Positions 3,976 through 35,026 of a stretch of 64,000 bases of DNA are shown here, one piece after another. The position numbers and the translations under genes were made by a program. The first letter of the stretch is position 1. Each line of letters begins with the position of its first letter. Location of the stretch: NCBI GenBank assembly GCA_044892525.1, contig CM097887.1:89568397-89632396 (forward strand), written 5' to 3'. The notes beneath the pieces were generated by a model. That model was not told the DNA's origin. It saw nothing but the letters and a program-made list of their open reading frames with translations, and did not search any database. Source of the DNA: Schmidtea polychroa. Lineage: Eukaryota.

Positions 3976-6900
3976 TTAAAGAAGTATGGTGAAAGTTAGG
4001 ATCAGATTATCATAATGACCTATTTCTGTAAATATAAAATTACAAAAACAACTAACCATCAACATCCCATTTAGAAGTAGGAATTGTATCATTGGGGTCC
4101 TGATTGTAGTTAATTTTCCAGAGACCTTTCGACAAGTAACAACGAACAATTTTTCCATCGTATTTTTCTTTCTCATATGAGGTTAAATACTTGATTTTTG
4201 TAAATGGCATAGAGGCTCCGTAAGCATACAGCAAACCAATCCATTTTTTATTTTTTCTGTTGTATAAATTATTGCTAAAAATACACATAAATAAATTAAC
4301 TGATTAATAACTGCCTTAAGTTTAAATTTGATATATCTGTAAAATGTAGGCATCCAAATATAAATGGTTGCTCTACCGAGAAATGTGTATGAAAAACTTC
4401 TATATGGATAGAATATTAATCCCGTCATTTCGTGTGGGATAGTTTTCTTAAGTTCAATCCAGGTCTATAAAATCTCAATGTTAATATTTAAAAAAATAAT
4501 TAATAAACAATTATAAATCTATTTAACACTAGATTTACGGGTAAAATAGCCGCAAAAATAGGTATACCTAATTCGATAAACGAAATGAAGGAGCGGGTAG
4601 AAACGAGTAATTAATATTTACCTATATTTCATGACATATCTAAAAACCAACATATGTATTCAAAAAATAATAAATCAGTATTATATATATGTAGCAATAG
4701 AATTTAATTGATATGAAATTTGAAACCCGTCAAATTGACGGGTTTCGTAAATCTAGTGTTAAAATAGTTACAAAATTCTAAATTTAAAAAATTTCAATAT
4801 TAGGGATCGAGTTTTATCATCTGGAGGAAAGTGAAAATTATCTACTGAAAAGAATAAAAAATCTTCACTTTCTCTAAATCGAACAAAGTTGCTTGATTAT
4901 CGGTTAAATTGATTATTGGTGGATTGATTATTGGTTATTTGGTTGATTTATTATTGGTTAGTTGGTTATTTGTTAGTTGATTATCGGTTAATTGATTATT
5001 GGTTAGTTGATTATTGGTTGATTGATTATTGGTTAGTTGGTTATTTGTTAGTTGGTTATCGGTTAATTGATTATTGGTTGATTGATTATTGGTTATTTGG
5101 TTGATTGATTATTGGTTGATTGATTATTGGTTAGTTGGTTATTTGTTAGTTGGTTATTGGTTAATTGATTATTTGATTGTATGGAATTTACTAGTTTGTT
5201 TAATAAGTGAAATCATGAAGAACAGTAGATGGATGGGGTACCCCTAGAGCAAGACTCCAATGGATAGTACCCCCTCCCGCCCTGGAGAAATTTTTTTAAA
5301 TATAGGTCAGGGTCAAATATGTAGGTCATTAGAATTTATTGAACGAATTTTTACAGAACTTGGACAGTTCACCATTATCATAACAAGTAGACATTGCACG
5401 TCTATCAGTCAAAAATTCAAATATCCTTATATGATTTGCAATATGTAAAATTCTTTCTTCCAGACTGACCAATGCCTATTCGGCGAGAACGATAAAAAAC
5501 TGTTGTTTCAGCTTCAATTTTCCATCTGCATGTTCATAGTCGACTGTGTTTTGGTGTGCCTGACACGTTTACTTTCAATCTCTATGGGAACGTGCATAGC
5601 TTCTGCAATTTCCTTAGCATCTCTTTCAGCATCTTAACTCCCAACGTGTGTTAGCCAAAGGTTTCAAAGTAGAATTTTTTAGGTGTCTTTTCAGGATATC
5701 CTAACGTTGAACAGAAGATGTGAATATCGTGTATAATTGTTACAGCGTTCCGAAGAAGGAAAGAGACTCCAGTAAAGATTTGGCAACGTCACAGACAATA
5801 AGGTTGATTGAATGGGTGACACCAGGATTAAAAAGGGCTTTTCTGTTCAACTTCAGCAGCCATGCTTGTATTTCGGAACAATTTTCCCTCATATTGGCTC
5901 CATTATCGCAACACTGAGCTCGAATATCTTTAAGGGACAATTGCAATGAGTTTGTTAGATTGTGGTAAATGCTTGAATAAATCCCTGCCCAGTAGTATCC
6001 TTCACACTCAGTAATCCTGTAAAATGCTGATTAACATAACATAGCGTTTGCATTCCATATGTCTCAGGAATACAGAAAGCTACTCTTGATGGCTTGTATC
6101 TGGTGTACAATTCATTATTACCGCAATGTACTTCGATTTTTTTAACTTATCAGAGATAACTGTTATGACTCTGTATAACTTTGCAAACATGAAAATTTAT
6201 GAACGATGCAAATTGAGATATTGGTGTATAATAAGGTGACCAGACATCCCGCTTTTGGCGGGACAGTCCCGATTTTTCACGATTTATCCCGCGTCAAAAT
6301 GAATAAAAAATATGTCAAGGAATGAAATATTATACAATTTTTTATATTTATAAATTGTACTTATGTAAAAATCAAAAAATATTACCATATTATTTATATT
6401 CTATTTGAACATTTTTGTTGATACCCCCTTCCTTCAAAGTTGTCCCGCTTTGCCCATCTAAAAATTTGGTCACCTTAGTGTATAAGCAAATTATGTAAAT
6501 TAGTATTGTATTTATTTAGTAAAATTAGAAATAAATATAACATAATATTGAAAGACGGCAAAAAGGTGGAAATAATTCAATACGAATTCAATAAAATTCT
6601 AGTATTATGTATTATAGTGGGCGTCGTTTCACCTGGGACAAACCATTTTTAGCATCATTCCCATATGTTCCCTATTTTTGTCAGCTTATTTGATAATTGA
6701 ACAATTTTCTAATTTTTTTAATACAAATCTATATTTTTCAAGCTAATCGAAATAAAATCAATCATGTTTCAAATGTGGATCCCACGCTGCACTGATGGCA
6801 ATTTAAAAATGACCCTGCCTAGATTTAAAAAAAAACCCAACCAAATATTCTGATCTAACAGTTAAATTTTGAATAATTCAGAAGACTATTATATTTATTA

Positions 6901-9900
6901 GAGTTTGAAGACTATAAATCAGTAATATATCGATGTTTGTTGATACTCACGAATTTTCGGCACTGTCTTTTTCAAGTGAATTCACTTAAAAAAAGCAATA
7001 CCGAAAATTCGTGAGTATCAACAAACATCGATATATTACTTATTTATAGTCTTCAAACTCTAATAAATTCAATGGAAAAAATATTTTGTGGTGAAATTGG
7101 AAGAAATAAAAGGTCTTATAATAAGACTATTATATGTTTTGAAAATTTACTTTTTACTTGCAATATCCTAATGATTTCTCCCTAAAATCTAAGACCTATG
7201 TCCTGAAAAAGTTGTTATATGATCTTCATTCAGTGAATAATTTAGTTTATGAATATTAAAAATTATGTATATGTTACATGGGAGCATTATAATTTTAAAA
7301 AGGCTTAGGTGGAGCATGACAAAAAAAATGATAGAGAAACACTATTATACAACATGGTAACACATAAGTTCATAAAGAAGAGTTTAGAATTTGATATGAC
7401 CAAAATGGAATGACGCACACTGTAAATAAAGAAAATAAAACTTTACCTTAAAAAGATCGTTGCTTTCAGATATTGTTTTCATCATAATATCAAACGGTCC
7501 ACGAGGAATTTGTGAGTCTATTTTTTCCTTCCTAACATCCATAATAAATTCCTGAATCATATCTAATCGTCTTGAATAGGACTCTTGATATATACGAGAC
7601 CCGCTAAGGGCATAAATATCTGATATTAAAAATACATAATATTTTTTGGAAGCGATAGTTTCAGCAACCAATTCCTAAAAATATTTTTCATAAAAATAAT
7701 GAAAGAAAAACTAATATTACATTTATATTAACTTATTACTGGTGACCGTCAAAATGTCTGCGTTAAAACGGGGTTTGTATATTATTATATAAAATTATTA
7801 GAAAAAACAATTATTTCAGTCATTAATAAATGTGGTTATAAAGACATCACATACAGTGGTTATAGGCATACAAAATATACAATTAAAAAATGTTACTGTT
7901 ACTTTTCATTATATTATATCAGAATAAATCGTATCATAGGTTGTTATAACATGATATTAAATGCAAGTATCTAATATATAAAGATGAAAGTTTGTTTGTT
8001 TGTTACCCATAAAATTCCCCACCGTTAGACCTAGGGTACTGAAATTGTGCATGTGACAATCATTTGACTCGGGACAGGTCATAGGCTATTAATGATCAGC
8101 AAGATATCCTATTAATGAGTGACCAACATATTTTTGAAATAAATTAACAAACACAATCTCTGATCCAATCATATTGTAACAGAAATCATATTTTTCAAAT
8201 TAATTATTTTTTTTATTAATTTTTTGACAACTTTACAATCACCTGTACCTCATGTTCTTTCCGGTATATTTGCCAATTTTAAAAGTCACTCGTGGATTTT
8301 ATCCTCTTTTAGATAACGTGTAAAAATTACTAATTGAACAGACAACTTAATATCATTTTTTTCATTTATGCAAATTGAGAAAGTCACAACTATTAATATC
8401 CATGTGAAGTTGATCTAAAATATTTACACTCATTTTTGAAATCCTTTCTTTCTGCTTAGCTGCAATTCTTGAATTCTTTGTAAAATTGTATTTGTATTGT
8501 TAAAATCTTGAAACAAACTGGAATGGAAGAAGCTTTTAACATAACCGCTTTTAAGAATAATCCACCAAAAAATGGTTTTTTGATTGTTTGACCATCAATT
8601 GTGATATTTCAAAACTGGCCTCAGTTACATTGCTTGAAATTTTTACGAATTAGAATAATAAGTTTGATTGATTCCCAGTAGTCTTTAACCGCCGAGAAAT
8701 TATTATTTCCTTTCAGTTATATTTTTATCAGCAATTTCCTTATGATTAGTTTCAAAATGTCTCTTAATAAAAGATTTCCGACATGCAATTATTCCAGATC
8801 ACAAACCACGACTTTTATCTTTATATTTATTAAAGCCATAATCAAGAGTCAACGATGGTAAAAAACTTCGCACATCCTGTAATTTTTATTTTTTCTTTGG
8901 TAACATTTCAATGGAGCAAATATTTTATAAAATAACAAAATCAATATTGACTTTTTTACATTTGCATTTCTCGATGTTGATCTTTACTAAGTGCCAGTGT
9001 TAGGCATTTATCACCTAATTTCTGATAAATTTCAGAATTTTTATTTTACAAAATATAAATATATAAATTCATGTCGATGAACTTAATATAATTGCTAGTT
9101 TGAACAATGTTTAAACTAACATATTTAAACAAGTGAATTAATCTTTAAATTATTAAAATATTAGAAATTAGAAAGAATTAAAATTGGAATATTATTAGAG
9201 ATATTTTTATAAGTAACTGTTTTTAGGATGAAATTAAAGATATTTTTTTCAGAAACTAAACACATGACTAAAAATTTTGTATGTGATAATGGTTTATTGA
9301 TATGCCCGTCTTTCCATCTTTCTGTACATTTTTTATTCAAATTCGGTTTTATCCATACTGGGTCACCAGCAGAATATTTTTCATCGATTATTATCTTTTT
9401 TTTTGTAGCTTGGCAGATTCAGTTTTCGATTATATCTAAATATGGCTCTAGATGGACATATATTATTGTTGTTTGGCGTATTATTGTACACAGCTTCTTT
9501 GATCGTTCCTGAGGACCTAGCTACTAGCGATTTGATTGTCCGAAGGCTGCGTTCAATGATCCCGTTTCCCGCTGGGAGGTTCACTGTTCTAAATAACAAC
9601 TCAACATTCCATTTATCTGCTAATTCTTGAAATGTTCTAGATCTAAAAGACATGAAATTATTTAATAATATTTCACTTGGAGCTCCTCTTTCATATAGCA
9701 CTTCATTTAAGGCATTTTATATCTCTTCTACCTTTTCTTTCTTAATTTTCTTCCAGATTGCATCTCGATGGCCTACAATAAATAATTGTCAAATATTTAT
9801 CTTTAGCGAATTTAGCTACATCAATTGCTAAACGGCACCAATTTTCATCACAGCTTAGTTCACCTTTTTCCCGTGTCACTGGCGCTGGGTCAATTGATAG

Positions 9901-12900
9901 GCATTGATTACAACTTGCAATTATTTCCGAGATCTCATTATCCACATTTAGTAGCCCCGCGTCCAATGCTAAGAACATGGCAATTCTTGTGAATTTCAAA
10001 TAACACATCTTTCGAGATTTTTGATTGCCTATTGCTGCGACTTTTTTAATAATCATCCAGTTGGCTGGTACTCTCGTTAATACATCAGCCTTGTTATTAT
10101 CTGCAGATACAAACTCAATATTCACTTTAAGTTCATACTCAATCGCTAGATCTTTTAAAAGTTCCAGCATCCGTCGTATCAACAACTCTGAATTTGCTTT
10201 TGTATGTATTTTTCTGTCGCTCTATAATATGCTGTTAACCCAACACACAACTGATTTACTATCGGATTTAATTTTGATAGACTTAAGATTCCATAAATTA
10301 ATACCCTTCACAATCGCTTCTAATTCCACTAAATTAATGTGTCTTGAATCATCAGGTTTTCGCAAACAACACGCATCTTCAACCAGTGAACCTTCCATTT
10401 CTAATACAATTCCAATAGCGATGGCACCAAATTATACCTGTCTGATTGCTGGGAACACTCCAAATACCTGACGATGGATCTCTTTCATTCACTTTTTTTT
10501 AACTTTAGGTTCATCTACGAATATATCGTCTATGTATGAACTTGTGCTATTGATTAATTCATTGTTCGTCAATACTTTATTCACAATCTCTGTCATCATC
10601 GTTGGTGCGATATTCAATCCAAATCGCATTCTCATAAGCACATATCTCTTCCCATTAACCATACAAGATTGGTATCGCCGACATGCTTTTATCCACATTT
10701 GCATATATGCATCAGATAAATCTAACATTGCAAATTCTTTACTAAAACATCTCCATGATCGTAATTTTTCAGAGCAGATTTCTGCATCCCCACTATATAC
10801 ATCAATATATTTATTGATACTCCTAAAGTCGAATACTGGACGCAGTTTCACTTTATTTGACTGAATTATACCATAAATAGGTACTGATCCGATCGGTTTG
10901 CTCATTGTTTTCTCGTAGTAATGAACTAGATAGCTCTTAGATATCCAAGAATTCAATATACGCATCATCTCCTGATCTTTACTACAATTATCATAAAAGT
11001 TCGAATTTATATTAGGTAGAAATTTCGGCGGCTCTGACTTCTAATCCCATTTGACAATCCATTTCTCGTTTTCAAATCTCGCAGAGAAATTTTCCTTCAA
11101 TATTTCTGACATACTACTACTAGAGCACGCTACATGACAAGGTGCTTCTTCGCTGCCGAATGTGGATTCTTTATTCAATCGAACTCCACCAAACCTATTA
11201 ATAAAATTCACTCCTAAAATTACATCATAATTGGATACTAATTTCGCGTATATTAAACAGTCAATATTAAATAACTTATCTCCAACCAATATATCAACTT
11301 TACTTCTATCAGCATATATTATTGAACCATCAAGTCGCAGTCATAGATTTTGTGGATTTCCTTTTACTATATTGGTAGTGCTTCCCAAATTAACTAAACA
11401 TGGTTTTACATCACCATTTACTAGGAGTCTCATATATTCACAATTCTTGGGCCACACTCGACTCCAACTTTCCCGACTTGCAAAACCTTGAAATATGTCC
11501 CATAATACCGCATTTTGTACAACTTACGTTGCGTCTTTCTGGACAGTATCTTACCACATGATTATCAGTATTGCATATATAGCATTTTTGATTGGCTTTC
11601 CTTCCACTATCTGATCTTGGTACAACTACTGCAACAGTTCCATTGTCATAAAATTGATGACTTGCGATTTTCTTTGCTTGAGCGACTAACTCATTCATCG
11701 TTGACGCTGTTGACATCTTTAGTCAATTTGACAAATGACTTGGTAAGCTATTTACAAAAAATCGGGTTAGTAGATCACCTAAACATTCCAACAGTGACCT
11801 TATTTTATTTACATGAACATCCAATTTATCACCCATTAAAAACTTTTTCTGTAAATGTTTTGTAAAGGCTTCTTGCTCGCTTATATCGAAAGTTTTTCCT
11901 TCTTCAGCATTCCGAAATCCATTGTCGTGTTGCTTTTCTTTAACTGTTTAAAGACTGCATACGATTGCCTTTCAAGTAAAAATGACATTACACTCATGAC
12001 ATTTTTCACATTCTTGGCTTCCAAAATAATTTCGAGTTTCTCCAACCATTCTTCCACATCTGTATTTTTGCCATCGAATTTTCCAACATTTTCAATTATA
12101 ATCTTGTTGATTTCCATTGCCCGGATAGCTTAAGACTAAACACGTTTTTTGAAATTCTATTTTACAACATTTTTATAATATTTAAACAACATTAATTGTT
12201 TGATATTACATTATTCCTACAACTATTTTTTATCTTAATTTAACTTTAAGTTTAAAATTTAATTTTATAATAATATTTCACAAATTATTATCACTTACCC
12301 CGTCAATAATAGTATCAATTAAAAATTTCCCTTTATGGTGAGGATGAGGAAAATTAAGATTTTCCACTTTAAAATACCTATTTTGTTCATCAATCATGTA
12401 TACGTGATTTTCATTTACGATAAACATTAAATATCGTTTCCCATTTGTTCTCCAGGTATGGTAGTATTGATTCGACATGAAATGTTTGTAAACTTTCCTT
12501 GTCACTAGTTTATATTTATGTCCAACAAATCCGTGCCTATTCAAAATTAAATTGTAAGAACAAAAACAATCATTTATGGGAAAAATATTAAAAGTATGAT
12601 GAAAAAATAATATGAAAAGTCTATCATTAATTAAAATTTTATATAAAAATATAGTAATTAAATATATCTAAATTAATTTTTTCAATGAAAATTTATCCTA
12701 ACCACTTAAGCATCTTGAACCAGACCATCTCGCTCGACTTATGTATTTCATTATGCACTTAGACGAGTAACTCACGCCGAAATATGTTCTGATTTTATCT
12801 CGAGCAAGAATTTAGAATTCAATGGGTTTAATTGCACGAAGTGTGCTTCAGGCGTGTTCGTTCACGCTTCTTTCGTTATTACTGTATATTTTCACGTAGT

Positions 12901-21900: not shown

Positions 21901-22003
21901 ATTTTCTAAGTATTTTGAGTTGACATACTTTTTTCAAAAATTATTGTTTTTAAATATATTAATTTGTTCCTTCAAAAATATCTGCTTGTTAGTACAGGAT
22001 AAT

Positions 22004-22066
<63 letters not shown>

Positions 22067-22147
22067 TTGCGACATGTTGAATGTGAGCAGTACATTTATG
22101 AGCAATACCCTTAGGGGGTCAAAATATCTTGTCGGATAAACTCCGAG

Positions 22148-22196
<49 letters not shown>

Positions 22197-25100: not shown

Positions 25101-28100
25101 ATTCTCTATCTTCCTTGCAAACTATTTCTTTCTTTCTTGTTTGTTTTTTTTCATATTTGAATTGTAAAGAACCTAAATAAATAATAAATGTAAAAATTCA
25201 TTTCGCTTAAAAAATATCAACTTTCAGGAGGAAGAGTAAATTCCCATTCTGGAGGATTTGGATAATGAATTGGTAAATTCGGTTGATGTAGGTTTAGCAA
25301 ATATTTCAAAAAAACTGGATTGTAAATTCCGGGAGGACGAGATTTAGCAAATAATTCTAAAGCCTCATTAAGCCTAATTGAATTAATTATAAATAAATTT
25401 CTAATGGATTAGAACTTACGGAATTCCACGTTGCGTTACCAGGTAATTTACTATCATAAATCCAGTCAAGTTGTAGCCATGAATACAATGAACAGCTGAA
25501 ATAAAACATAAAGTTGTTTCTTTAAAAGTATATTACAAATTTTAAAGAATTAAAAAAATTTACCAACTTACCGATTTTTCCCTCTTTATCCAATTCTATA
25601 TTTTTATTAACTATTTTGGTAAATGCTGTGATTTGTTTAGAAGTTGGCAAAGCTTCAACTCTAAAAATTATTTATATATTTATTTATTTTTATAATTATT
25701 GGTCAATACCGATTAAGTTTAAAATTTTTAATTTCAATTTTATGCTAAATCAAAAATTTTAAATATTTTTGATTTTAACTTTTGTTTAATTACTTCATAT
25801 ATTAATAGTTAATAATGGTGAAGGAGATTGTAATTTGAAAATCATTGTTTAATGTATTTGATTAATGTTAAGAAAGAAACTTTGAAAGTTGCTTGTTTCC
25901 AATTTATTTTTCTTTATTTGAATTTAATGGAATCAGGGAATGATGAAATGCCAATAAAAGAATTAAATAATGATTGTTACATGTATATTACCAAGGGAGT
26001 TTTAAATATTTGCTGCGATTACCATTCATTCAAGATAACATTAGAAGATGCGGCAAGCGTAAAAAGATTAGGACTCCCTGAACCAACAATTATAAGTAAC
26101 ACTGATACATTTCAAATTGTAATTCCACCGTATGTTGATTGCATTATGAATAATGTAATTAGAATGAAGTTAACGTACAATTGTTTACAAGATTCAGTTT
26201 TCACATTTACTGATGATTTATACATAAAAAAGCTTTAAGGTTTATTCAACTATTTAACAATTAATTGCACCCATATTTTCATATCTGTTGAACTGAATGA
26301 AAATGTCATTAAATTCAGTCTCATTGAAAACATTAAAGAAGTTATTTTTGATAAAAACTTGGTCAACACATTTGGATTACAAAAACAAATATATAATGAC
26401 TAACAATTTGTTGGAATTCGTAAAGGAAAAATATTTAATCACCATCAACAAACGTTCATCTATAGCGATATTATTGATCCGATAAATGTTGGTGATTCAC
26501 TGGCCCCTCTTCTGAAAGCGGTGTGGATTAAGAAATATGAGCAATATGAAGTTGTGTAAATACAAAAAGAAAATCCTATGTATTTACCAGTTGGCAGAAC
26601 ATGTATAAAAAATATAGAAATTAATATACGTGATGATGGCGGAAATTTAATCCGAATTGCAAACGATTCAAAAACACACGTAACTTTACAGGTAGAAAAA
26701 ACAAGATTTCTAATCCCGATATAGTTTCTCTTTATTCCAATAGTCAAACTGGTGGCGAATTACCTTATTTTGTTGGCAAACAATAATAACAATAATAATG
26801 AAAAAATATTACCATCTTTAAAATCCAATGCCATATCTGAATTCAAACAGGCATTACCAGATATAATTTCTTCATTACCAAATGTAATCGAATCAAATGA
26901 AGCATCGGAATCTGAAGAGTCTGAACCACAGCCTAAGCAAAGAAAACATCGAAGGTATATAAACAAACGAATGACAGGACGTGGAACTATATTCGAAAAA
27001 TGATTTGTGGAAAAACGGAATTATGTATTTTTGATCGACCGACTCCTCAGGCGGTTATAGAAAATGCGACATTTGAAGACGTATTCCCATTTAATTCAAT
27101 TGTTGATAATAAAAGCGATATTGAATTCAAGTTAACTGGTTCTCATACTGAATATCTCGATTTGAATGATACATTACTCTACATTAAATTAAAGGTTACA
27201 AATAATAATGGAAAGAAATTACCGGTTACTTAAGATACAAAAGCTTATAATTACTTGTTCCATACACTTTTTAGTGATGTTATTGTTGGACTCAATAATC
27301 AAAAGATTGAAGGTGGAAACAGAAGATATACACAAAAAGCTTAAATTGAAACTATTTTAAATTATAATGGAGATAGTAAAAACATTTGTCTGGCTCCTAT
27401 GGGTTATATTCCATCTGATAAGGAAAGAACAGCATTAATTGCCGGTTCTAAATTAGTTTCCCTATGTTCTTCATTGTAAATAGGTTTTATGGATCAACCA
27501 AAATATTTACTTCTAGGAGTTAATGTTAATGTAACACTGAAAAGAAACCCATCATCATTCAGTATACATTCACTAACTGATGAACCAAAGATAAAGGTAT
27601 TGAACGCAAAATTAATGATTCGCAAAGTTCAAGTTGAACCATCAGTTTTAGCAGGGCATCAAATAGAGTTAAATTCTAAAAATGCTATATATCCAATTAG
27701 AAGTAAAGAAACTGTCGACTTTACAATCAGTAAAGGTTCATCGTCATTTTACAAGGAACAATTATTTATTGATAAAAGATTACCAAATTTCGTTTTAGTG
27801 GCATTTCAAACTGAATCTCAATTTAAGGGAACATATAAGAAATCCAGCTCAGTCTTTAAACATTTGGATATTACATCAATCACTTTAGCCAAAAATAGTG
27901 ACTATCGAGAAACATACACAAAACTTTGACACAAATGATTATACTACAACGTATATGCAAAGTATTGTGAGAAATCTGGGGTATTTGGATAAAACGTGAA
28001 CTGTGGGATTACACTTGAAGATTTTAAAGATAAATATTCTTTACATTTGTTTTGTCTCCAGATTTTGATTTGAATCAAAGTCAATTACCACAACAAGGAA

Positions 28101-31100
28101 ATTTAAAATTGAGTGTAAAGTTTAATAAATCACTCGAGGAATCGGTTTATGTAATAGTATACGGAGTTTTCGAAAGAGAATTACAAATTACTGCAAGTCG
28201 ATCAGTATTGGTTTGAAATACTTTCAAACGTTATTGGTTTAAACGTAGTATAAATGAAGTAAACAATGGAAACAAATATTATGGAGTAAGTTTATAATTA
28301 TTAATTTATTTTATTTGATTAGTTCTCTTCAGGTTAATCGAATTGGAAAAATGTTGTTGGGGAATCAGTTTACTGGAGTATTTCCATTAGATAAAATCCC
28401 CTATCTGAAGGTAAACCAAGCTATAATCGTCAATACTCAATCATCAAATCTTAGAGGAGAACATTGGATTGCAATATATGTGAAACCTGATAAAATACAT
28501 GTTTTTGATCCGATGGGATATTATTATCCAGATATTGATAACAAAACTACAAACAATTGGTAATTAAATTATTATATTGGTAATTATATAATTATTTATA
28601 ATTATTTTGGTTATTTAATGATTTACCATTTTGGGATGGACTTGAAAATTTAGATCCATTGGAATGGCATGAAGGCGTAGATTCGTTTTGTCCAACATGT
28701 GTATTGAGATTTCTATATTGAATTTTCTATGTCACTGATCAAGATAAACTTACAGTTTTGAAGAATTATTTCCCAAACTTAAGATTAATAAAATATTCAA
28801 TCCAATTATCAGAATATTTTCCTGATAATATCTTGTGTCCTTACCGTGATCATTCTAATTGTGCTTACAAAAATTGTTTAATTGCTGTGTTAGATTATTT
28901 TAAAAATTAATAAAGTTTTTGATAAAAATTATATTATTATTATTAATTTTGTTATTACTCATATGCATTACGAATGCAGTTTAAATGCAGTTAAAATCAT
29001 GTTCTCTTAGTTTGTGTGAAATTTTTATTTTGTAATGTGTGTAAGTTTTGCTTCCCATTGTGTGAAAAGTATACTTCTATTACATCAACTTCTACAGAAG
29101 TCATTATTAATCAACAAGGTAGTTTACTTGAACCTGAAACCATATTCGATTTAAATAAAACACATGCAGAAGTTAAAATGGATGTTTCATCCTTAAATTT
29201 AAAAACAGTTTCAATCCCTACTCAGTTAATAAATGAATTAAATAAAGTTTCATCCGAGATGGGTTCAATAAAAATTCAATTTTGTTTGAAAGTGGAATTT
29301 GAAAAAGATGACGAATTTCAATCATTCGTTATTTCAAATTCTGCTAGACCCATGAGTGATACCTTCTTAGAAGATGGTATTGATTTATTAAATGAAAAAA
29401 TAATTAAAGTTAATGAAAAAGGAAGCAACTGGGTTATACATAAAATTGAATATATTAGTTTTATAATAACAAAATATTCGCAAATATCTAGATTATCTGG
29501 CCGTGGATATATTCCTACACCAGAAACATTATTAAATAAAACATGTACTGTTAATGTTAAAAATACAAATGATGAATACTTCCTCTATAGTATTTTATCT
29601 ATTTTGAAATATAATAATATTAGTACCAATAGAAATAAGCCATATAATTATAATACTTCGGAATTAAAATTCGATCATGCAGATCTCCCTATGCGCCTTT
29701 GTAATATTTCTAAATTTGAATCCCAAAACCCCGGTTTATCGATAAATGTTTACTTATAACGAAAATATATTAAATGATGTTAAGAATACTGAAGAAGTTA
29801 TGAAACATCCTTATGTTGACATAATTTATCGATCTAAAGTTATTGGGTGACAACAATTAATTTAATTTTGTTAGAAGATTCTGACACATCATTACATGGG
29901 TGTTACTAATCTTGATAGACTTTTGAATTGTTACAATTCTAGTGTAACTGCTGTTATGATTTGTAGTAAATGGTTCCGAGATGCTTAAATAAACTTTTCT
30001 TCGGCTGTAAATTGTCATTTGTGTAAGAAAACTTTAGTAAATCCAGTAAGAGATCATGACCATTTTTCGGGTAAATATTTTGGTGCAGCTTGCTTAATTG
30101 TAATCTTTCTCGAAGAATTAGACCGGTTTTACCAGTTATTTTTCATAATTTGAGAGGATATGATCTCCATCATATTCTCAAATTTGGCTTAGGTAAATTT
30201 AAATCATGGAATATTAATTGTATTCCTATAACTAGTGAAATGTTTTTAAGTTTATATGCAAGAATTGATGGATTAACTATAAAATTTATCGATTCTTGTC
30301 CTTTTATTAACGATTCTTTAAAAAATGCTGTATAAACATTAACTACATTTCCATTGACTAATTCTGAATTTAACGGGGTAATTATTAATAGTAAGGGCAT
30401 ATTCCCATATGATTTTGCAACTCCCCAATTACCACCAATTTGGGATGGTGTTACTGAAGTAGAATATGATATAGCTCAACGCATTTGGGATGAACATAAT
30501 TGTAATTCACTTTTGGATTACATGATTATATATTTAAAATTAGATGTCTTTTTACTTGCGGATTATTTCCAACAGTTTAGAGCAAAATCAATAGCTCATA
30601 ACAGATTGGAACCCTTAAACTTTTTAGGTATTCCAGGTATGTCATGGAACTCTGCGCTCATGACTTTAGATCATCCAGTTGAGTTGATCCAAGACATGGA
30701 GATTTATAATTTCTTTGAGGGTGGGATTTGAGGGGGATTAACTTTTGTTAATAAACATTACGTAAAATCAGATGAAAACACAGAGTTGCTCTATATAGAT
30801 ATTAACAACCTATATGGTTGGGCACTTAGCCAGAAACTACCAGATGGTAATTTTAAGTGGATTAACGATGAAATAAAATTAAATTAAATTTTGGAAGATT
30901 GTATGAATGTTGACTTGGAATTACTCACATTCGGTTATACTGTTGAAGTTGATTTGGAAATTCCAGAATCGATTCATGATAAGCTTGACGATTTCCCTGT
31001 TGCAGCTGAAAAAATGCGTGCACCTGGATCCAAAGTGGAGAAAAAAGAATTATGTATTTCATTGGAGACTTCTTCAGCTTTATCTAAATATTGGGGTAAA

Positions 31101-34100
31101 TGTCACTAAGATTCATCGCGCTATACAATTTGAACAATCATCAATATTTAAAAATTATATAGATACTAACACACAACTTAGGGCATCATCAACAAACAGA
31201 CTAGATAAAAATTATTTTAAACTATTAAACAACAGTCTATACGGTAAGACGGTCGAAAACCTAAAGAAACGAATAAATTTAAGATTTTGTAATTCAGCCC
31301 AAAAGGTTTTAACATATTGTTCTAAACCTAATTTCAAAAGGACTACTAAAATCGATGACGACTTAATTTCTGTTCTATTAAGAAAAGATTTATTATGTTT
31401 AAATAGACCAAGTTATATTGGTCAATCAGTTTTGGATTCATCAAAACTTCGTATGTACCAATTTCAGTACATTGATTTAGAAAAATATCGTATAGAATTT
31501 AATTGTAAAATTAATATAGTTGCTTGGGATACAGATTCCTTTTTCTTGGAAATTAAAAATTGCAAATTAAATTCTCTTTTACCAGCAATGATAAGGGATA
31601 ATTTATTAGATATTTCTAATTATGAGCCAACACATTCATTATATTCAAAAAACCTTGACTCTGTAATAGGAAAATTTAAAAATGAGAGCAAGGGCTTGGA
31701 TATGACGAATGGATATTTTTAAGACCAAAATGTTATAGTATGAAGGGTAGTAAGGGATGTATGAAAGCGAAAGGGGTCACAATGAAAGATACTGGACTAA
31801 CTCATCAGTCGTATCTGAATTGCTATAATAATAATGAGATTTATGCGGTACCCCAATTTAGGATAACGAGTAAAAATCATCAACTTTTCAGTATTAAAAA
31901 TAATAAGAGGGCTTTAACTAATGCTGACGATAAGCGCAATTGGGTACTTAAAAATAAAAGTTATGCGTATGGTCATTATAGAGGGAGTGGTATGGTTATG
32001 GCTGATGATTCTGATGAAGAAATGTTGCTGCCCATAGTTGATCCAGATGAAGATTTGTTATATCATCCTAATTTTCCGAATGATGATAATGAGGATGGTT
32101 GTCAATTAATAAATTTTATGATATAAAAAATTTGTTTTTACTCTATTTTTAATCGTTACAAAATTTTTATTTTGTTAGTGTTACTTGTGATAGTACACTA
32201 TTTTTATATTGTTTTAGTATTTTTATGTTACTTGTTATATTCAATCAGTTTTTGGTGAGAAAACATTTTCAAATTTACTGAAAGAAACAAACCCAATTAA
32301 GAAAATAACTGAGACGAAGCATGTCAAGAATGATGTGAAACCAGTACAAATGTATCATAACCATAAGATATATTTCTTGGTAGACGAAATTGAATATAAA
32401 TTCTCAAATGCAGTCAAATTGATCAAGTCGCAATATTCAAGTTTCATTGCTATTATAACAAAAGAAGATGTTGTTGCAGTAAATAAAGTGTTGGGGAAAA
32501 TCAATAAAAATCTAAGTTGCAATGGAAATATAATCATCAACAATCGAAATTCCCGTTTTCATGATGCCTTTGGAGAAATTGAATATAAAGATGGGGAAAG
32601 CTGGTTTGTAAATATTTCAATACAGGGATATAAAATGGATGAGAAAGATGTCATATCACCGATTTGGAAATTAATAAATGTTTAATAAATGTTTAGTTTT
32701 TAATACATCTTTTAATATATCTTTTAATATAATTTTTTACTATCATAATGAGTTTTCTTAAGTATAGATGAATAATTTGTATTTTTTAAAAGTTGAAAAT
32801 ATGTGTGTATGTAAAAGTTGGCTGAAAAAGGCATTGTCTAAGGTGTTATGATTGTGAATTTGAAGTAAATAATGATTTCATTTTGTAGAGATTAAAATTC
32901 TATCTATATATTGTTTGAGTGAAAATATCTCAATTTATTTAAAAAGATGTGTAAATTCAAAAATGGTGTACTAAAAATGAAATTTCAGAATTTTGATTGC
33001 GTCATAGTTTCATTTAATAGAGAATTAAATTTCAAGTATATTGACATAAAAAATTCTTATAAAAAATCAAAATTTATGATGTAATCAATGATTTAAATAA
33101 AATTAAAATTATTACATAATCGACGATTTAAACAAAATAAATTTTATTACGTAATCGACAACTAAACCAAAAATTTAAATTTAAAAAAAAGTAGGGGGGG
33201 GGGGGTTATTTTTAAAATTTTTAAAAAAAGTAGGGGGGTCTTTTTAAAAAAAATTAAATTATGGGGGGGGGTCTTTTTAAAAAATTTTAAAAAAAATATG
33301 GGATGGGAAATCTGGATCTGGACCCTACATAACTACCTACTATAGCATTTTAGCTATTTTGAAATATGATGATATTACTAATAGTAATAACGGTAATCAT
33401 AGAAATAGACTTCCTACTTAAAATTTGACCCTGCCGATTTACCCATGCGCCTTTCTAATATTTCTAAATTTGAAACCAAAAATCCTGGTTTATCCATAAA
33501 TGTTCTGACTTATAACTAAAATATTTTAAATGATGTAAAAAATACTGAAGAAGTTATGAAATGTGTTTAAATTAATCGAAAAATAAAATGATTTGGGAAA
33601 TTCAGGGGGCACTTGCCCCCATTTACGGACGCCCATGATATATACATATTTTGTTGTAAAGACATAATTTACTTNNNNNNNNNNNNNNNNNNNNNNNNNN
33701 NNNNNNNNNNNNNNNNNNNNNNNNNNNNNNNNNNNNNNNNNNNNNNNNNNNNNNNNNNNNNNNNNNNNNNNNNNNNNNNNNNNNNNNNNNNNNNNNNNNN
33801 NNNNNNNNNNNNNNNNNNNNNNNNNNNNNNNNNNNNNNNNNNNNNNNNNNNNNNNNNNNNNNNNNCAAAATAATTAAAAAATTTATACAAATTATAATTA
33901 ATCACCCAGGAACTGTTATCTTAATTTGAAGTACATCTGTCATATCTTTTGACTTGTAATATTGTTCAGAATCTATTAAATCTATCACTAGAACTATACG
34001 GTACTAGATCCTTTAATTAATCAAATACCACATAACAAAAACACGTACCATATCAGCTTGATCTGTTAGAAAACCAACATTGAATGTGTTAGCTTCTGGA

Positions 34101-35026
34101 ATCAAATCGGTATATCTTTCGTCAAGAACTGTCTTCATTGGAAAAAATAGATCTAAATAAAGTCTATCATAAAATATTTCATAAATACTTTTTCTGTCTG
34201 TGTTCTATGCATTTCTAGTAATCTAATATTAGATTTGACACAATACTCTTTTTGCAATTGTGTGTATTTAATAATCCGGATTAAATAACATCTTTTTAAA
34301 ATAAAAACAACTATAAACAGAAAGAAAAGTCCTTAATAAATTCCGTTTGCTTTTATTAAATAAAAGTTTTGACAGGCTGGGAACCTCACAAATATAAAAT
34401 AACTACAGGTATTGTTTGAACAGTCTATTAGATTTTCTCAGAAATTCTAGTCGTCGTCCCCATCGGCATGCAGATAAACGTTTTATCCTGATATTACATT
34501 AATCAAATGCATGTTTTTATTGCTTTATAGCGAATCATTTAGGATAGCGCATCAGTGCAGCAAATGATATCAGATAATATTTTTTAACATTATTGTTTGA
34601 TAATTTTAAATAAATATGACGCCTTTATCACGGCGCCCCACAATATCACCTATACTGCCTGTTTTTTGGGCCGGCTTTAATTATGATTCATACGTTATCG
34701 TTTCACAAGATGGTGGAATTATGAATCATACTATATTAATTTTTTTTGGTTTTCTGAGTAAGTCACCTAAAAATACACAAACTTTTAATTAACGATTAAG
34801 GCCCTCCATTTGAATTTTTACTCCAATCGTATTTTTTGGACGAAAAAGATTTTCCGGTTTGAAAGATTAACATCATTTTTATATATTTATATGTATTTTA
34901 TATAAAAACTATTTTAATAAAAATATTTAAATATGCAAAATTTAGGAAACATTTATATATACCCGCTATTATATATCCTCTTCTGGGTGACTGGATCCAT
35001 CCTCTGGGAACTCTGTAAGACGACAT
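3976..35026 (-). CDS. Paralog A: catalytically degenerate mRNA capping enzyme-like protein (pseudo-triphosphatase + RD/RS-repeat linker + pseudo-guanylyltransferase/OB fold), 14 exons, about 913 aa
   Basis: Hand-spliced GT-AG exons with consistent phases: 35026-34963, 34152-34049, 34003-33906, 25660-25572, 25495-25420, 25373-25222, 25172-24333, 13952-13830, 13558-13243, 12536-12299, 7674-7447, 4464-4301, 4256-4057, 4025-3976 (2742 nt, no internal stop). Peptides: MSSYRVPRGWIQSPRRG, DLFFPMKT, IVLVIDL, VHCIHGYNLTGF, FAKSRPPGIY, PNPPEW, HGFVG..WRTNGKRYLM, IDGELV, FLISDI, HEMTGLIF, WIGLLYAYG. The join between the TPase and GTase halves (24333->13952) and the last exon are inferred, not transcript-proven. 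Confidence 0.8.
4527..4758. mobile_element. TTAA-flanked MITE (piggyBac-like)
   Basis: TIR cactagatttacg / cgtaaatctagtg, with TTAA on both sides. Confidence 0.8.
4895..5175. repeat. 15-bp minisatellite (TTATTGGTTRRTTGR)
   Basis: About 18 degenerate units, with occasional 16-nt variants. Confidence 0.9.
5300..6231 (-). pseudogene. Decayed hAT (Tip100/ZMYM1-like) transposase
   Basis: DCTPDTSHQE, CDNGANM, THSINLIVCDVAKS..FFGTL; many stops and frameshifts. Confidence 0.8.
6232..6477. mobile_element. hAT-Tip100-type MITE
   Basis: TIR taaggtgaccaga / tttggtcacctta, with a perfect 8-bp TSD GTGTATAA. Confidence 0.9.
6901..7060. mobile_element. Palindromic MITE (GAGTTTGAAGAC family)
   Basis: Near-perfect inverted repeat of about 65 bp. 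Related copies occur at about 23417-23548, 24090-24160 and 59940-60012. Confidence 0.8.
7970..8130 (+). mobile_element. Possible Helitron-like 5' end
   Basis: atctaatatataaagatgaaagtttgtttgtttgtt resembles invertebrate non-autonomous Helitron 5' termini. No 3' hairpin/CTAG was confirmed. Confidence 0.4.
8200..9000 (-). pseudogene. Decayed hAT (GTF2IRD2/Charlie-like) transposase fragment
   Basis: Remnants read KRHFETNH, KKPFFGGLFLKAVML and LLKLANIPERT*G, with many stops. Confidence 0.55.
9230..12130 (-). mobile_element. Decayed Ty3/Gypsy-type LTR retrotransposon inside an intron of paralog A
   Basis: Order is gag (11881-12117; CCHC knuckles CYICNTDNHVVRYC and CTKCGIMGHISRFC), protease-like region, RT (YIDDI, 10489-10968), RNaseH (NKADVLTR), integrase (GNGIIERSLRTIK). 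Frameshifted; LTRs not resolved. Confidence 0.85.
12900..13140 (+). pseudogene. pogo/Tigger DDE_1 transposase fragment
   Basis: LQLLAILVNHSFKANLRHQWKDWMTEG..RRATYAQMGEWI. Confidence 0.7.
14660..16590 (+). mobile_element. Decayed pogo/Tigger-like DNA transposon
   Basis: Imperfect TIRs containing tggagattgcgc / gcgcaatctcca. CENP-B-like HTH (FKASDSW) and DDE_1 pieces (NIDQIP, LILDSYPVHL, LQSIDFG); disrupted. Confidence 0.8.
16656..16754. mobile_element. hAT-Charlie-type MITE
   Basis: TIR gagtgtttcccaaa / tttgggaaacgccg, with a perfect TSD GTCTAGAC. Confidence 0.85.
19790..20310. repeat. Compound microsatellite and tandem repeat block
   Basis: (AGT)n, (GATGTC)n and (GTGGTC/GTGGTT)n, followed by 3-4 units of about 50 bp (gtggtcagttagt..acaatgtgtgtatgac). 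Confidence 0.85.
22005..22197. repeat. (AAT)n tracts flanking an about 85-bp dispersed repeat
   Basis: The insert gcgacatgttgaatgtgagcag..cccttagggggtcaaaatatcttgtcggataaac also occurs at about 20697-20790, 42740-42785 and inverted at about 17845. Confidence 0.8.
23550..24050 (+). pseudogene. hAT transposase C-terminal (hATC) fragment
   Basis: EIFPNVVVAL*IIISMPVSVASGERSFSKLKLIKSYLRSTIAQDR. Confidence 0.85.
24333..25172 (-). repeat. Coding tandem repeat exon (EDRSRDR/DDRSRNR units; Arg/Asp/Ser-rich) of paralog A
   Basis: ORF 24310..25101 extends upstream in frame to a TAG acceptor at 25173. It contains recurrent GATCTATCTC/TCTTGA units with higher-order blocks. Confidence 0.85.
25930..26720 (+). 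pseudogene. Polinton minor capsid (penton) protein, disrupted
   Basis: YSDIIDPINVGDSLAPLLKAV..MYLPVGRTCIKNIEINIRDDGG..VTL, a typical penton C-terminus. Confidence 0.75.
26752..27003 (+). CDS. Polinton small core-like protein (basic C-terminus, GRG motif)
   Basis: KQRKHRRYINKRMTGRGTIF; it overlaps the capsid gene start, as in Polinton layouts. Confidence 0.45.
   Translation: MANYLILLANNNNNNNEKILPSLKSNAISEFKQALPDIISSLPNVIESNEASESEESEPQPKQRKHRRYINKRMTGRGTIFEK
27000..28215 (+). pseudogene. Polinton major capsid protein, several premature stops
   Basis: IEFKLTGSHTEYLDLNDTLLYIK, HTLFSDVIV.LN, DQPKYLLLGVNVNVTLKR, LPNFVLVAF. Confidence 0.85.
28315..28563 (+). pseudogene. Adenain-like (C5) maturation protease, truncated
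   Basis: GVFPLD..IIVNTQSSNLRGEHWIAIY..FDPMG. The catalytic Cys region is missing. Confidence 0.8.
29016..32126 (+). pseudogene. Protein-primed family B DNA polymerase (pPolB), frameshifted
   Basis: DHDHFSG, FHNLRGYDLH, KLDVFLLADYF, YIDINNLYGWALSQKLP, KLLNNSLYGKT, WDTDS, KAKGV, DDKR. Confidence 0.92.
33180..33345. repeat. G-run/T-run/A-run low-complexity block, probable Polinton terminus
   Basis: Repeated AAAAGTAGGGGGG(G)TCTTTTTAAAA units ending in ..actacctact. Confidence 0.45.

What the first reader, a model, noticed from the sequence alone, without database searches (positions are those of the whole stretch)
3976..35026. A 'double-dead' mRNA capping enzyme paralog that still keeps an intact 14-exon ORF
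Seen: the ORF track shows only unrelated fragments, but they splice with phase-consistent GT-AG junctions into one ORF of about 913 aa. It is collinear with canonical paralog B (exon 2 is 104 nt in both; A exons 4+5 total 165 nt, equal to B exon 4). Both catalytic centres are substituted, yet I found no stop or frameshift over 2.7 kb of exon, while the surrounding TEs are heavily decayed. Known: pseudoenzymes often act as scaffolds, substrate traps or dominant-negative regulators. Inference: a selected, non-catalytic 5'-end or Pol II CTD-binding protein derived from capping enzyme. It could shield or sort 5'-triphosphate RNAs, compete with capping, or act in trans-splicing or germline RNA pathways. 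I know of no described metazoan example.
Basis: partly seen in the sequence, partly recalled or inferred. Interest (0 to 1): 0.92.

Follow-up and report, generated by a model that had tools for sequence, protein, structure and literature searches.

The report
Catalytically dead capping-enzyme paralogue, ORF intact
A Hydra-like genome carries, beside two normal copies of the enzyme that caps messenger RNAs, an old third copy that has lost the key residues of both active sites yet stays readable, so it probably makes a non-enzymatic protein of unknown role.

Summary

- **Collinear with the family.** Copy A matches the bifunctional capping enzyme over both domains.
- **Catalytic losses.** The triphosphatase P-loop is HCIHGYNLTG: Cys kept, Arg changed to Leu. 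Guanylyltransferase motif I is RTNG instead of KxDG, and motifs IV, V and VI have lost their Asp, Lys and Arg residues.
- **Introns are real.** Eleven of 13 introns sit at the position and phase of introns in a tick or mussel orthologue. Four of these are absent from neighbour B.
- **Selection for an open frame.** There are no in-frame stops in 569 homology-supported codons, against 103 in 1138 off-frame codons. Neutral simulations to the same loss of invariant residues always gave at least 5 stops.

Caveats:
- The Arg/Asp/Ser repeat exon E7 and exon E8 lie inside the ancestral intron and have no homologue. Skipping them keeps the frame, giving about 577-592 aa.
- E8's donor abuts an assembly gap.
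- The last exon needs a 31-nt intron.
- The known Pol II CTD phosphoserine pockets are gone.
- No transcript or orthologue could be checked.
- Similar degenerate paralogues exist, undescribed, in rotifer, sandfly and mite records.

The scan had already noted parts of this locus on this same stretch.

The parts
34963..35026 (-). A exon 1 (64 nt). It starts at ATG 35026 and encodes MSSYRVPRGWIQSPRRGYIIA. The donor is GTATAT, phase 1.
   Evidence: There is an in-frame stop 5 codons upstream of the ATG. The intron position and phase match B and Ixodes.
34049..34152 (-). A exon 2 (104 nt, the same length as B exon 2). The donor is GTACGT, phase 0.
   Evidence: The junction matches Ixodes.
33906..34003 (-). 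A exon 3 (98 nt, one codon shorter than in B). The donor is GTGATT, phase 2.
   Evidence: The junction matches Ixodes.
33675..33865 (.). Assembly gap lying 40 nt inside intron 3. It does not touch coding sequence.
   Evidence: E3 and E4 are contiguous in homology with B.
25572..25660 (-). A exon 4 (89 nt). The donor is GTAAGT, phase 1. The 76-nt intron that follows sits just before VHC. This intron is absent from B and present in Ixodes.
25420..25495 (-). A exon 5 (76 nt) with the triphosphatase P-loop HCIHGYNLTG. The Cys is kept and the Arg is replaced by Leu.
25222..25373 (-). A exon 6 (152 nt). RPPGIY is kept. The ancestral donor after PEW is lost (TGG G|AA). A GTTGAT donor 21 nt downstream has the same phase. 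Reading through it instead stops at TGA.
24333..25172 (-). Candidate exon 7 (840 nt, a phase 1-1 cassette). It is an Arg/Asp/Ser-rich tandem repeat with periods of 24, 48 and 132 nt. It has no stop in 279 codons. Its natural stop lies 21 nt past the proposed donor. It sits inside the ancestral intron 6.
13830..13952 (-). Candidate exon 8 (123 nt, a phase 1-1 cassette). It is a diverged duplicate of the start of exon 9. Its donor GTATAT directly abuts the gap.
13613..13823 (.). Assembly gap between the two copies of the duplicated exon start. What lies between them is unknown.
13243..13558 (-). A exon 9 (316 nt). It holds the acidic linker start, a KKRR stretch and the helix before the guanylyltransferase domain. 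Its acceptor is homologous to the acceptor of B exon 6. The donor is GTAATT, phase 2, at the same place as in C and Mytilus.
12299..12536 (-). A exon 10 (238 nt). It carries guanylyltransferase motif I as WRTNG instead of WKADG and ends at IIDG. The donor is GTAAGT, phase 0, which is the ancestral DG|E intron.
   Evidence: (PF01331, 57.7 bits)
7447..7674 (-). A exon 11 (228 nt). Motif III (DGE) and motif IIIa are kept. The donor is GTAAAG, phase 0, at an ancestral intron shared with Mytilus.
4301..4464 (-). A exon 12 (164 nt). Motif IV is TGLIF (Asp lost). Motif V is IWMP (both Lys lost). The donor is GTTAAT, phase 2, followed by a 44-nt intron at the same place and phase as in B, C and Mytilus.
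4057..4256 (-). A exon 13 (200 nt), the OB-fold part. Motif VI RxDK is replaced. The donor is GTTAGT. Reading through it stops at once (DG*), as paralogue C ends (ANS*).
3976..4025 (-). Doubtful exon 14 (50 nt). It needs a 31-nt intron and shows almost no similarity to the conserved C-terminal exon.
39919..44007 (-). Paralogue B. It is canonical (HCTHGFNRTG, KADG), with 8 exons and 591 aa. Six introns are 43-64 nt and one is 2020 nt.
   Evidence: It is 88% identical to P0129.
60448..61917 (-). Paralogue C: linker plus guanylyltransferase domain, with KPDG. Its triphosphatase exons were not found inside the window.
   Evidence: It is about 80% identical to P0080.
26000..33000 (+). Fragmented Polinton/Maverick-like element inside intron 3. 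It has a weak, sub-threshold match to a double-jelly-roll capsid domain, an adenovirus-type protease and a type-B DNA polymerase.
9381..11716 (-). Fragmented retroelement inside intron 10, with reverse transcriptase and a CCHC gag.

Best explanation
Copy A is an old, intron-rich paralogue of the bifunctional metazoan mRNA capping enzyme (RNA triphosphatase plus guanylyltransferase). It lies downstream of two catalytically intact paralogues, C and B, in a Hydra-like genome.

**Shown**
- A is collinear with the family over both domains.
- It keeps 11 ancestral intron positions.
- It has lost the P-loop Arg of the triphosphatase.
- It has lost the Lys nucleophile and the key acidic and basic residues of guanylyltransferase motifs I, IV, V and VI.
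- Its reading frame has nevertheless stayed open far beyond what neutral decay allows.

**Inferred**
- A encodes a protein of about 577-592 aa that keeps the two folds but cannot hydrolyse a 5' triphosphate or form the enzyme-GMP intermediate. With the repeat exon E7, and optionally E8, the protein would be up to about 913 aa.
- It acts by binding rather than by catalysis. The most likely role is as a nuclear scaffold or competitor in RNA 5'-end or RNA-processing complexes. If E7 is included, the Arg/Asp/Ser-rich repeat would serve as an SR-like interaction or targeting region.
- It does not use the canonical Pol II CTD phosphoserine pockets, because they are gone.

My confidence of 0.6 is for 'a real, selected, non-catalytic gene'. 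For the specific scaffold or competitor mechanism I would give about 0.3.
For: - **Model.** It was reproduced exactly: 2742 nt and 913 aa.
- **Profile matches.** A family profile matches A's triphosphatase region at 163 bits and its guanylyltransferase region at 178 bits, end to end. Shuffled versions scored at most 11 bits. Exon 10 alone passes the Pfam PF01331 cut-off, 57.7 against 29.6 bits.
- **Catalytic substitutions.** These were read directly and in alignment.
- **Intron positions and phases.**
  - Shared with Ixodes: i1, i2, i3, the intron just before VHC, i5 and DG|E.
  - Shared with Mytilus: the phase-2 intron before GFPG, DG|E, K|V, the phase-2 intron before the OB domain, and the last phase-1 intron.
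  - B lacks four of these.
- **Open frame.** There are 0 in-frame stops in 569 homology-supported codons against 103 in 1138 off-frame codons. That gives P of about 1e-20 to 1e-24.
- **Neutral simulation.** Evolving B's coding sequence until invariant-site retention fell to 58% gave 18 stops on average. The minimum was 5, and 0 of 1000 runs were stop-free.
- **Invariant residues.** A keeps 57 of 99 while overall A-B identity is 28%.
- **Tree.** A is sister to the Hydra-type clade (B, C and P0130, a third Hydra-type paralogue that I call D), with SH-aLRT support of 85. Its branch is very long. This fits the intron pattern and a duplication older than the B/C split.
Against: - **No expression or orthologue evidence.**
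  - No transcript data could be consulted.
  - No protein more than 47% identical to exon 10 exists among 1.84 billion cluster representatives.
  - Exons 9 and 11 found nothing. The collection also lacks this species' own copy of B, so this absence is weak evidence.
- **Possible signs of decay.**
  - The ancestral E6 donor is lost.
  - Three of 13 donors are GTT.
  - The C-terminal 30-odd residues no longer match the family.
  - The last intron of the model is only 31 nt.
- **Branch length.** A's branch is about 6-9 times longer than typical, so constraint on the sequence is weak.
- **Binding residues.** The known CTD-binding and nucleotide-binding residues are gone. No binding function can be read from the sequence.
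Confidence: 0.6

Rival explanations
1. A is a recently dead gene. It lived for a long time as a non-catalytic, or progressively degenerating, protein-coding paralogue. It has now stopped being expressed or correctly spliced, too recently for stops to have accumulated.
For: - The ancestral donor of E6 is lost, and reading through the replacement donor stops at once.
- The donors GTTGAT, GTTAAT and GTTAGT are weak.
- The C-terminus is degenerate and the last intron is 31 nt.
- The introns are swollen to 3-10 kb by transposable elements.
- No matching protein is in the databases.
Against: - Every homology-supported exon is open and in phase.
- The replacement E6 donor keeps the ancestral phase.
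- The 44-nt and 49-nt introns lie within the 43-64 nt range seen in the working copy B.
- Paralogue C has the same GTTAGT with an immediate stop at its 3' end, and its orthologue P0080 is annotated as ending there.
Confidence: 0.2
2. The locus makes two separate products instead of one. The first is a triphosphatase-like protein. It ends either at the TGA after E6 (195 aa) or after the Arg/Asp/Ser repeat (481 aa, stop at 24310). The second is a separate guanylyltransferase-like transcript starting downstream.
For: - The E7 reading frame reaches its own stop 21 nt past the proposed donor, and an AATAAA lies 13 nt after that stop.
- The E7-to-E8 intron is 10.4 kb, holds an assembly gap and is not an ancestral junction.
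Against: - E6 ends in phase 1 and E9 begins in phase 1, exactly like the ancestral junction in B and Ixodes.
- The start of E9 is homologous, in register, to the start of B exon 6. Only 4 of 1000 shuffles reached that score.
- E9 has no initiator context of its own.
Confidence: 0.12
3. The open frame is an artefact of choosing splice sites in AT-rich DNA, or of the assembly. A is then an ordinary decayed pseudogene.
For: - GT and AG are abundant in DNA of 29% G+C.
- Three exons (E7, E8, E14) have no homology support, and one donor abuts a gap.
Against: - Eleven intron positions and phases coincide with those of a tick or mussel orthologue.
- Exon lengths match B to the nucleotide: 104 nt, and 89 + 76 = 165 nt.
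- The chance of 569 stop-free codons is about 1e-20.
Confidence: 0.03

Closest known systems
Metazoan bifunctional mRNA capping enzyme (RNGTT / Mce1 / CEL-1). The nearest solved structures are 3RTX, 3S24 and 8P4A.
   Same: - The domain order is the same: a cysteine-phosphatase-type triphosphatase, a linker, then a nucleotidyltransferase and OB-fold guanylyltransferase.
- The sequence is collinear over both domains.
- Intron positions are shared.
- Motifs III and IIIa, RPPGIY and most core hydrophobic, Gly and Pro residues are kept.
   Different: - P-loop Arg is changed to Leu.
- Motif I KxDG is changed to RTNG.
- Motif IV Asp is changed to Thr.
- Motif V KWK is changed to IWM.
- Motif VI RxDK is lost, and QPVS is lost.
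- All six basic residues of the CTD phosphoserine pockets are lost.
- There may be a 280-aa Arg/Asp/Ser repeat in the linker.
- The branch is about 6-9 times longer than typical.
Neighbouring paralogues B (44007-39919) and C (61917-60448) of the same window
   Same: - They share the strand and the tandem array.
- They share the short-intron style of 43-64 nt.
- They share the introns i1, i2, i3, i5, i6, i12 and i13.
   Different: - B and C keep all the catalytic motifs checked: KADG/KPDG, DGE, DGLIF and KWKP.
- They have lost two to four ancestral introns that A keeps.
- A shares 28% identity with B, against 47% between B and C.
Degenerate capping-enzyme-like proteins in other metazoan records. 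Examples are Adineta steineri CAF1513430.1 (P0061), Phlebotomus papatasi A0A1B0DMK0 (P0038), and Galendromus occidentalis and related mite entries (P0095, P0245, P0040).
   Same: - They are homologues of the same enzyme with substituted catalytic positions.
- P0061 has the P-loop Cys changed to Ser, motif I Lys to Ser, motif III Glu to Val and motif IV Asp to Asn.
- P0038 has motif I Lys changed to Ile.
   Different: - In the tree the rotifer and sandfly records group with the canonical enzyme of their own lineage. The mite records form a separate long-branched group. None groups with A, so they look like independent origins.
- They are automatic gene models, some of them partial, and I did not check them for expression or pseudogene status.
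Pseudophosphatases and other pseudoenzymes, as a general class (my own knowledge)
   Same: They are enzyme folds retained under selection after loss of catalytic residues. They usually act as scaffolds, competitors or allosteric partners.
   Different: - In my recollection many pseudophosphatases lose the catalytic Cys. Here the Cys stays and the Arg is lost.
- I found no paper describing a protein with two dead catalytic domains derived from the capping enzyme.

Membership tests
Bifunctional metazoan capping enzyme (RNGTT family), by homology | N-terminal cysteine-phosphatase-type RNA triphosphatase domain | tested here: met
   The family profile matches A residues 3-188 at 163 bits, against at most 4 bits for shuffles.
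Bifunctional metazoan capping enzyme (RNGTT family), by homology | C-terminal nucleotidyltransferase and OB-fold guanylyltransferase domain | tested here: met
   PF01331 scores 57.7 bits for exon 10 alone and 23.7 bits for exon 11, on consecutive profile positions. The family profile scores 178 bits. The nearest PDB entries are 3RTX and 3S24.
Bifunctional metazoan capping enzyme (RNGTT family), by homology | Gene structure inherited from the family (shared intron positions and phases) | tested here: met
   Eleven of 13 introns match Ixodes and/or Mytilus and/or B in position and phase.
Active RNA 5'-triphosphatase (cysteine phosphatase type) | Intact P-loop HCxxxxxR(S/T) | tested here: not met
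   The loop reads HCIHGYNLTG: Cys present, Arg changed to Leu. Other family-invariant positions are also changed: T66I, R70Q and T123I.
Active mRNA guanylyltransferase (covalent nucleotidyltransferase superfamily) | Motif I KxDG with the lysine nucleophile | tested here: not met
   The motif reads WRTNG: Lys changed to Arg and Asp changed to Asn.
Active mRNA guanylyltransferase (covalent nucleotidyltransferase superfamily) | Motifs III, IV, V and VI with their conserved acidic and basic residues | tested here: not met
   Motif III DGE is kept. Motif IV DGLIF is TGLIF. Motif V KWKP is IWMP. The Arg, Asp and Lys residues of motif VI are all replaced.
Pol II CTD-binding capping enzyme | Basic phosphoserine pockets CDS1 (R330, K331, R386) and CDS2 (R358, K403, R411), as defined in PMC8034621 | tested here: not met
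   A has P, H, E at CDS1 and V, gap, M at CDS2. B keeps CDS2 as R/R/R.
Pseudoenzyme (a selected, non-catalytic homologue) | Evidence of purifying selection after loss of the catalytic residues | tested here: inconclusive
   Retention of the open frame rejects neutral decay, and core residues are preferentially kept. No orthologue was available for dN/dS, and a recent death cannot be excluded.
Pseudoenzyme (a selected, non-catalytic homologue) | The gene is expressed and spliced | not testable with these tools
   No transcript data were available. The protein collections hold no A-like sequence, but they also lack this species' own copy of B.
Pseudogene | Disabling lesions (stops, frameshifts, lost splice sites) | tested here: not met
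   There is no stop or frameshift in E1-E6 or E9-E13. One ancestral donor is lost but is replaced in phase 21 nt downstream.
SR / RS-domain proteins | Arg/Ser-rich domain together with an RNA-recognition motif | tested here: not met
   The 279-aa E7 has 23 RS, 22 SR, 27 DR and 16 RD dipeptides. No RRM is present, Pfam found nothing in E7, and whether E7 is an exon at all is unverified.

The most novel reading that the evidence does not exclude
A is a long-lived, selected 'double pseudoenzyme' derived from the capping enzyme, possibly carrying an SR-like Arg/Asp/Ser repeat. It would act as a regulator or decoy in capping, spliced-leader trans-splicing or another nuclear RNA pathway. It would also be one instance of a recurrent and so far undescribed trend, in which metazoan lineages (Hydra, bdelloid rotifers, sandflies, mites) independently keep catalytically degenerate capping-enzyme paralogues.
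Probability: 0.3. Interest if true: 0.75.

Novelty: new variant of a known kind. Interest (0 to 1): 0.6.

Why it matters
In most animals studied the capping enzyme is treated as a single, essential housekeeping gene. Here it has expanded to at least three tandem copies.

- **An unusual pseudoenzyme.** The structurally most ancestral copy has lost both activities yet keeps its frame. That would be a rare case of a two-domain pseudoenzyme.
- **A possible new partner.** It would point to an unknown non-catalytic partner in RNA 5'-end biology, in an animal that also trans-splices.
- **Possibly recurrent.** Rotifer, sandfly and mite records hold similar degenerate copies, so the phenomenon may be recurrent and worth a systematic survey.
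- **What is shown.** At present only sequence-level inactivity and selection for an open frame are shown. Expression and function are open.

Tried and rejected
1. **Search for A's own protein or an orthologue.**
   - Exon 10 against 1.84 billion cluster representatives gave a best identity of 40-47%, and every hit I checked has the canonical WKADG.
   - Exons 9 and 11 against the 5.8-billion collection gave nothing.
   - The control with B's large exon found orthologues at 88% (P0129) but no 100% match. This species is therefore not in the collection, and the blanks say little.
2. **Varroa gene structure.** The contigs returned were intronless or cDNA-like, so they were useless for intron positions.
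3. **Protein atlas look-up of the repeat exon.** It returned only low-scoring, low-complexity look-alikes.
4. **Test of E7's start against the linkers of C, P0080 and B.** It was not significant: 328-959 of 1000 shuffles did as well. The N-terminal linker of P0130, a third Hydra-type paralogue, gave a weak match to E7, with 6 of 1000 shuffles reaching it. I treat this as a lead only.
5. **A 26-nt intron between E12 and E13.** I rejected it as too short. The 44-nt alternative lies at the same conserved place.
7. **Literature searches.** Searches for a described dead capping-enzyme paralogue found none.
8. **A as a member of an ancient pan-metazoan dead family.** I rejected this. The rotifer and sandfly degenerate paralogues group with their own lineage's canonical enzyme, the mite ones form a separate group, and none groups with A.
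Full report
**Setting**

The window has 29% G+C and is full of transposable-element remnants. The genome piece extends tens of megabases on either side and holds spliced-leader sequences, according to earlier notes. I read the genome as a Hydra-type cnidarian, but this is an inference.

A motif scan of the six-frame translation found three capping-enzyme copies on the minus strand:
- **C**: guanylyltransferase part at 61917-60448, with KPDG.
- **B**: 44007-39919, with HCTHGFNRTG and KADG.
- **A**: the finding, 35026-3976.

**Checking the observation**

I located A's exons by tblastn with B's exon translations and with fetched family members. I then read every junction in the DNA. The resulting 14-exon model is phase-consistent with GT-AG at every junction.
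- Exon 2 is 104 nt in both A and B.
- A's exons 4 and 5 (89 + 76 nt) equal B's 165-nt exon 4.

B's own model has 8 exons and 591 aa. Its introns are 43, 46, 46, 50, 2020, 64 and 44 nt. A's 44-49-nt introns are therefore normal for this gene family. Only the 31-nt intron before E14 falls outside that range.

**The assembly gaps**

- Gap 33675-33865 starts 40 nt into intron 3. E3 (...KITVPG) and E4 (VEALPTSKQ...) are contiguous against B (...RIPCEG / HDGPPTIEQ...), so no exon is hidden there.
- Gap 16786-16968 lies inside the 10.4-kb intron 7.
- Gap 13613-13823 matters. E8's proposed donor GTATAT is the last six known bases before the Ns.
- E8 with its upstream intron end is a diverged tandem duplicate of the start of E9. 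The copies are about 85% identical over the first 100 nt and less after that, with indels. That is too diverged for two alleles.
- What lies between the two copies is unknown.
- E8 (123 nt) and E7 (840 nt) both begin and end in phase 1. The frame therefore holds with or without either of them.

**Are the introns real?**

This was the key test, because in AT-rich DNA a reader can always find a GT and an AG. I fetched the genomic loci of an Ixodes scapularis and a Mytilus galloprovincialis capping-enzyme gene and read their junctions.

A shares position and phase with Ixodes at:
- i1 (phase 1, after ...A/G)
- i2 (phase 0, before the ...LxIDL exon)
- i3 (phase 2, ...G|H)
- i4 (phase 1, directly before VHC)
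- i5 (phase 2)
- DG|E (phase 0)

A shares position and phase with Mytilus at:
- the phase-2 intron two codons before GFxG
- DG|E (phase 0)
- K|V (phase 0)
- the phase-2 intron between the nucleotidyltransferase and OB parts
- the last phase-1 intron

B lacks i4, the intron before GFxG, DG|E and K|V. C keeps the intron before GFxG but lacks DG|E and K|V.

So 11 of A's 13 introns are ancestral. A is the most intron-conservative of the three copies. It cannot be a recent copy of B or C.

This fits the trees. A attaches outside the clade of B, C, their 80-88% orthologues and P0130, a further Hydra-type paralogue that I call D. Support is SH-aLRT 85, and placement is unresolved. A's branch is very long: 2.7-4.9 changes per site against a median of about 0.5.

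**Catalytic state**

In the alignment with 16 family members:
- The triphosphatase P-loop is HCIHGYNLTG. The Cys is kept and the Arg is Leu.
- The conserved T.RYY, C.GH and FKTPL stretches are also altered.
- Motif I is WRTNG, against WKADG.
- QPVS is gone.
- Motif III DGE and motif IIIa are kept.
- Motif IV DGLIF is TGLIF.
- Motif V LKWKP is YIWMP.
- The Arg, Asp and Lys residues of motif VI are all replaced.

From established knowledge of the covalent nucleotidyltransferases and the cysteine phosphatases, these changes exclude formation of the enzyme-GMP intermediate. They almost certainly exclude triphosphatase activity as well. This is an inference, not an assay.

Of 99 columns that are at least 90% conserved in the family, A keeps 57, while overall A-B identity is 28%. 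By my count from that list, 40 of 56 hydrophobic, Gly or Pro columns are kept, against 17 of 43 polar or charged ones. This is the pattern expected for a retained fold without an active site.

A family profile built without A matches both of A's domains end to end, at 163 and 178 bits. The last 30-odd residues are the exception.

**Is the open frame more than chance?**

- In the 11 homology-supported exons there are 0 in-frame stops in 569 codons, against 103 in 1138 off-frame codons of the same exons. At the off-frame rate the chance of no stop is 4e-24. At the intron rate it is 9e-20.
- A recently dead enzyme would also lack stops, so I asked how much neutral change is needed to lose 42% of invariant residues. 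Simulated neutral substitution of B's coding sequence to that point took about 0.26 changes per site. It left 18 stops on average, never fewer than 5 in 1000 runs, and this was without any indels.
- The invariant residues were therefore lost while the frame was being kept open. A was under selection as a non-catalytic protein for a substantial time. A recent death after that period cannot be excluded.

**The linker and the repeat exon**

- E9 starts with an acidic stretch. It aligns in register from the exon start with the start of B's exon 6 (score 47; 4 of 1000 shuffles reach it). Ixodes also starts an acidic exon right after the triphosphatase domain.
- E6->E9 is therefore the ancestral junction, and both sides are in phase 1.
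- A's ancestral E6 donor is mutated (TGG G|AA). A GTTGAT 21 nt downstream restores a phase-1 donor.
- E7 begins 49 nt after that donor, inside the ancestral intron.
- E7 is a tandem repeat with periods of 24, 48 and 132 nt, all multiples of three. The 132-nt copies are 94% alike.
- The repeat is confined to this spot in the window.
- It is open only in the proposed frame: 0 of 279 codons are stops, against 6-55 stops in the other five frames. This includes about 70 non-repeat flanking codons.
- Its product is 25% Arg, 18% Asp and 15% Ser, with many RS/SR and RD/DR dipeptides.
- It has no significant similarity to the linkers of B or C. It has only a weak match to the N-terminal linker of P0130 (6 of 1000 shuffles).

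I consider E7 a plausible new cassette exon, at perhaps 60%, but it is unproven.

The possible products are:
- about 577 aa: E1-E6 and E9-E13, stopping by read-through of the last donor, as paralogue C does
- 592 aa: the same with E14
- up to 913 aa: with E7 and E8
- truncated forms of 195 or 481 aa, if the E6 or E7 donors are not used

I mapped the human and mouse CTD-docking residues listed in PMC8034621 onto the alignment through a rodent sequence returned by the search.
- A has P/H/E at CDS1 (R330, K331, R386).
- A has V/gap/M at CDS2 (R358, K403, R411).
- B keeps CDS2.

CTD binding by the known route is therefore not supported, and the residues that contact GTP are gone. What remains is two folded modules, a basic KKRR stretch in E9 and possibly an SR-like repeat. 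My best guess is a nuclear scaffold or competitor. The mechanism is inferred, not shown.

**Comparison and novelty**

Full-text searches found no paper describing a catalytically dead capping-enzyme paralogue in an animal.

Among the proteins fetched here, however, several automatic gene models carry substituted catalytic positions:
- Adineta steineri CAF1513430.1: Cys changed to Ser, and Lys changed to Ser.
- Phlebotomus papatasi A0A1B0DMK0: Lys changed to Ile.
- Mite entries with degenerate motifs I and V.

In the tree the rotifer and sandfly models sit with their own lineage's canonical enzyme, and the mite models form a separate long-branched group. None groups with A, so such copies appear to arise repeatedly. 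A is therefore a new variant of a known kind (a pseudoenzyme paralogue), and the particular kind seems undescribed.

**Limits**

- No transcript evidence and no orthologue could be examined.
- The protein collections do not contain this species, so their silence about A is weak evidence.

**Verdict**

My interest score is 0.6.

Noticed in passing
window 39919-44007 and 60448-61917 (minus strand): Two catalytically intact capping-enzyme paralogues, B and C, lie upstream of A in the same orientation. They are intron-poor compared with A. B has lost four ancestral introns and C at least two. C's triphosphatase exons were not found inside the window.
   Followed up: partly
proteins P0061, P0038, P0040, P0095/P0245, P0110, P0042, P0003 (fetched): Automatic gene models of capping-enzyme homologues with substituted catalytic residues exist in bdelloid rotifers, sandflies and a predatory mite. 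In the tree the rotifer and sandfly ones group with their own lineage's canonical enzyme, which suggests repeated independent origin of degenerate paralogues.
   Followed up: partly
protein P0130: A further Hydra-type paralogue (491 aa, KPDG) has an Arg/Ser/His/Asp-rich N-terminal linker and a long unrelated C-terminal extension. It is 57% identical to B, so the family has at least four members in Hydra-type genomes.
   Followed up: no
window about 26000-33000 (plus strand): A Polinton/Maverick-like element lies inside A's intron 3. It has a weak, sub-threshold match to a double-jelly-roll capsid domain, an adenovirus-type cysteine protease and a type-B DNA polymerase. All are split into short reading frames.
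   Followed up: partly
window 9381-11716 (minus strand) and 15565-15930 (plus strand): A retroelement remnant (reverse transcriptase and a CCHC gag) lies inside intron 10. A DDE_1 transposase fragment lies inside intron 7. Both are fragmented.
   Followed up: partly
window 13830-14070 against 13243-13612: There is a diverged tandem duplication of an intron end plus the start of exon 9. The two copies are separated by the assembly gap 13613-13823.
   Followed up: yes
window 44777-45167 against 54987-55412, and 38489-39091 against 54342-54886: Dispersed repeat copies are shared between the flanks of B and the region upstream of it, with 50-96% identity at the translated level. The 38489-39423 stretch reads like a reverse-transcriptase remnant, but I did not test it against Pfam.
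   Followed up: no
window 45899-46606 (minus strand) and the G+C-richer stretches at 46-48 kb and 50-52 kb: A 236-aa open reading frame sits in a region of about 40% G+C, well above the window's 29%. Its nature was not examined.
   Followed up: no
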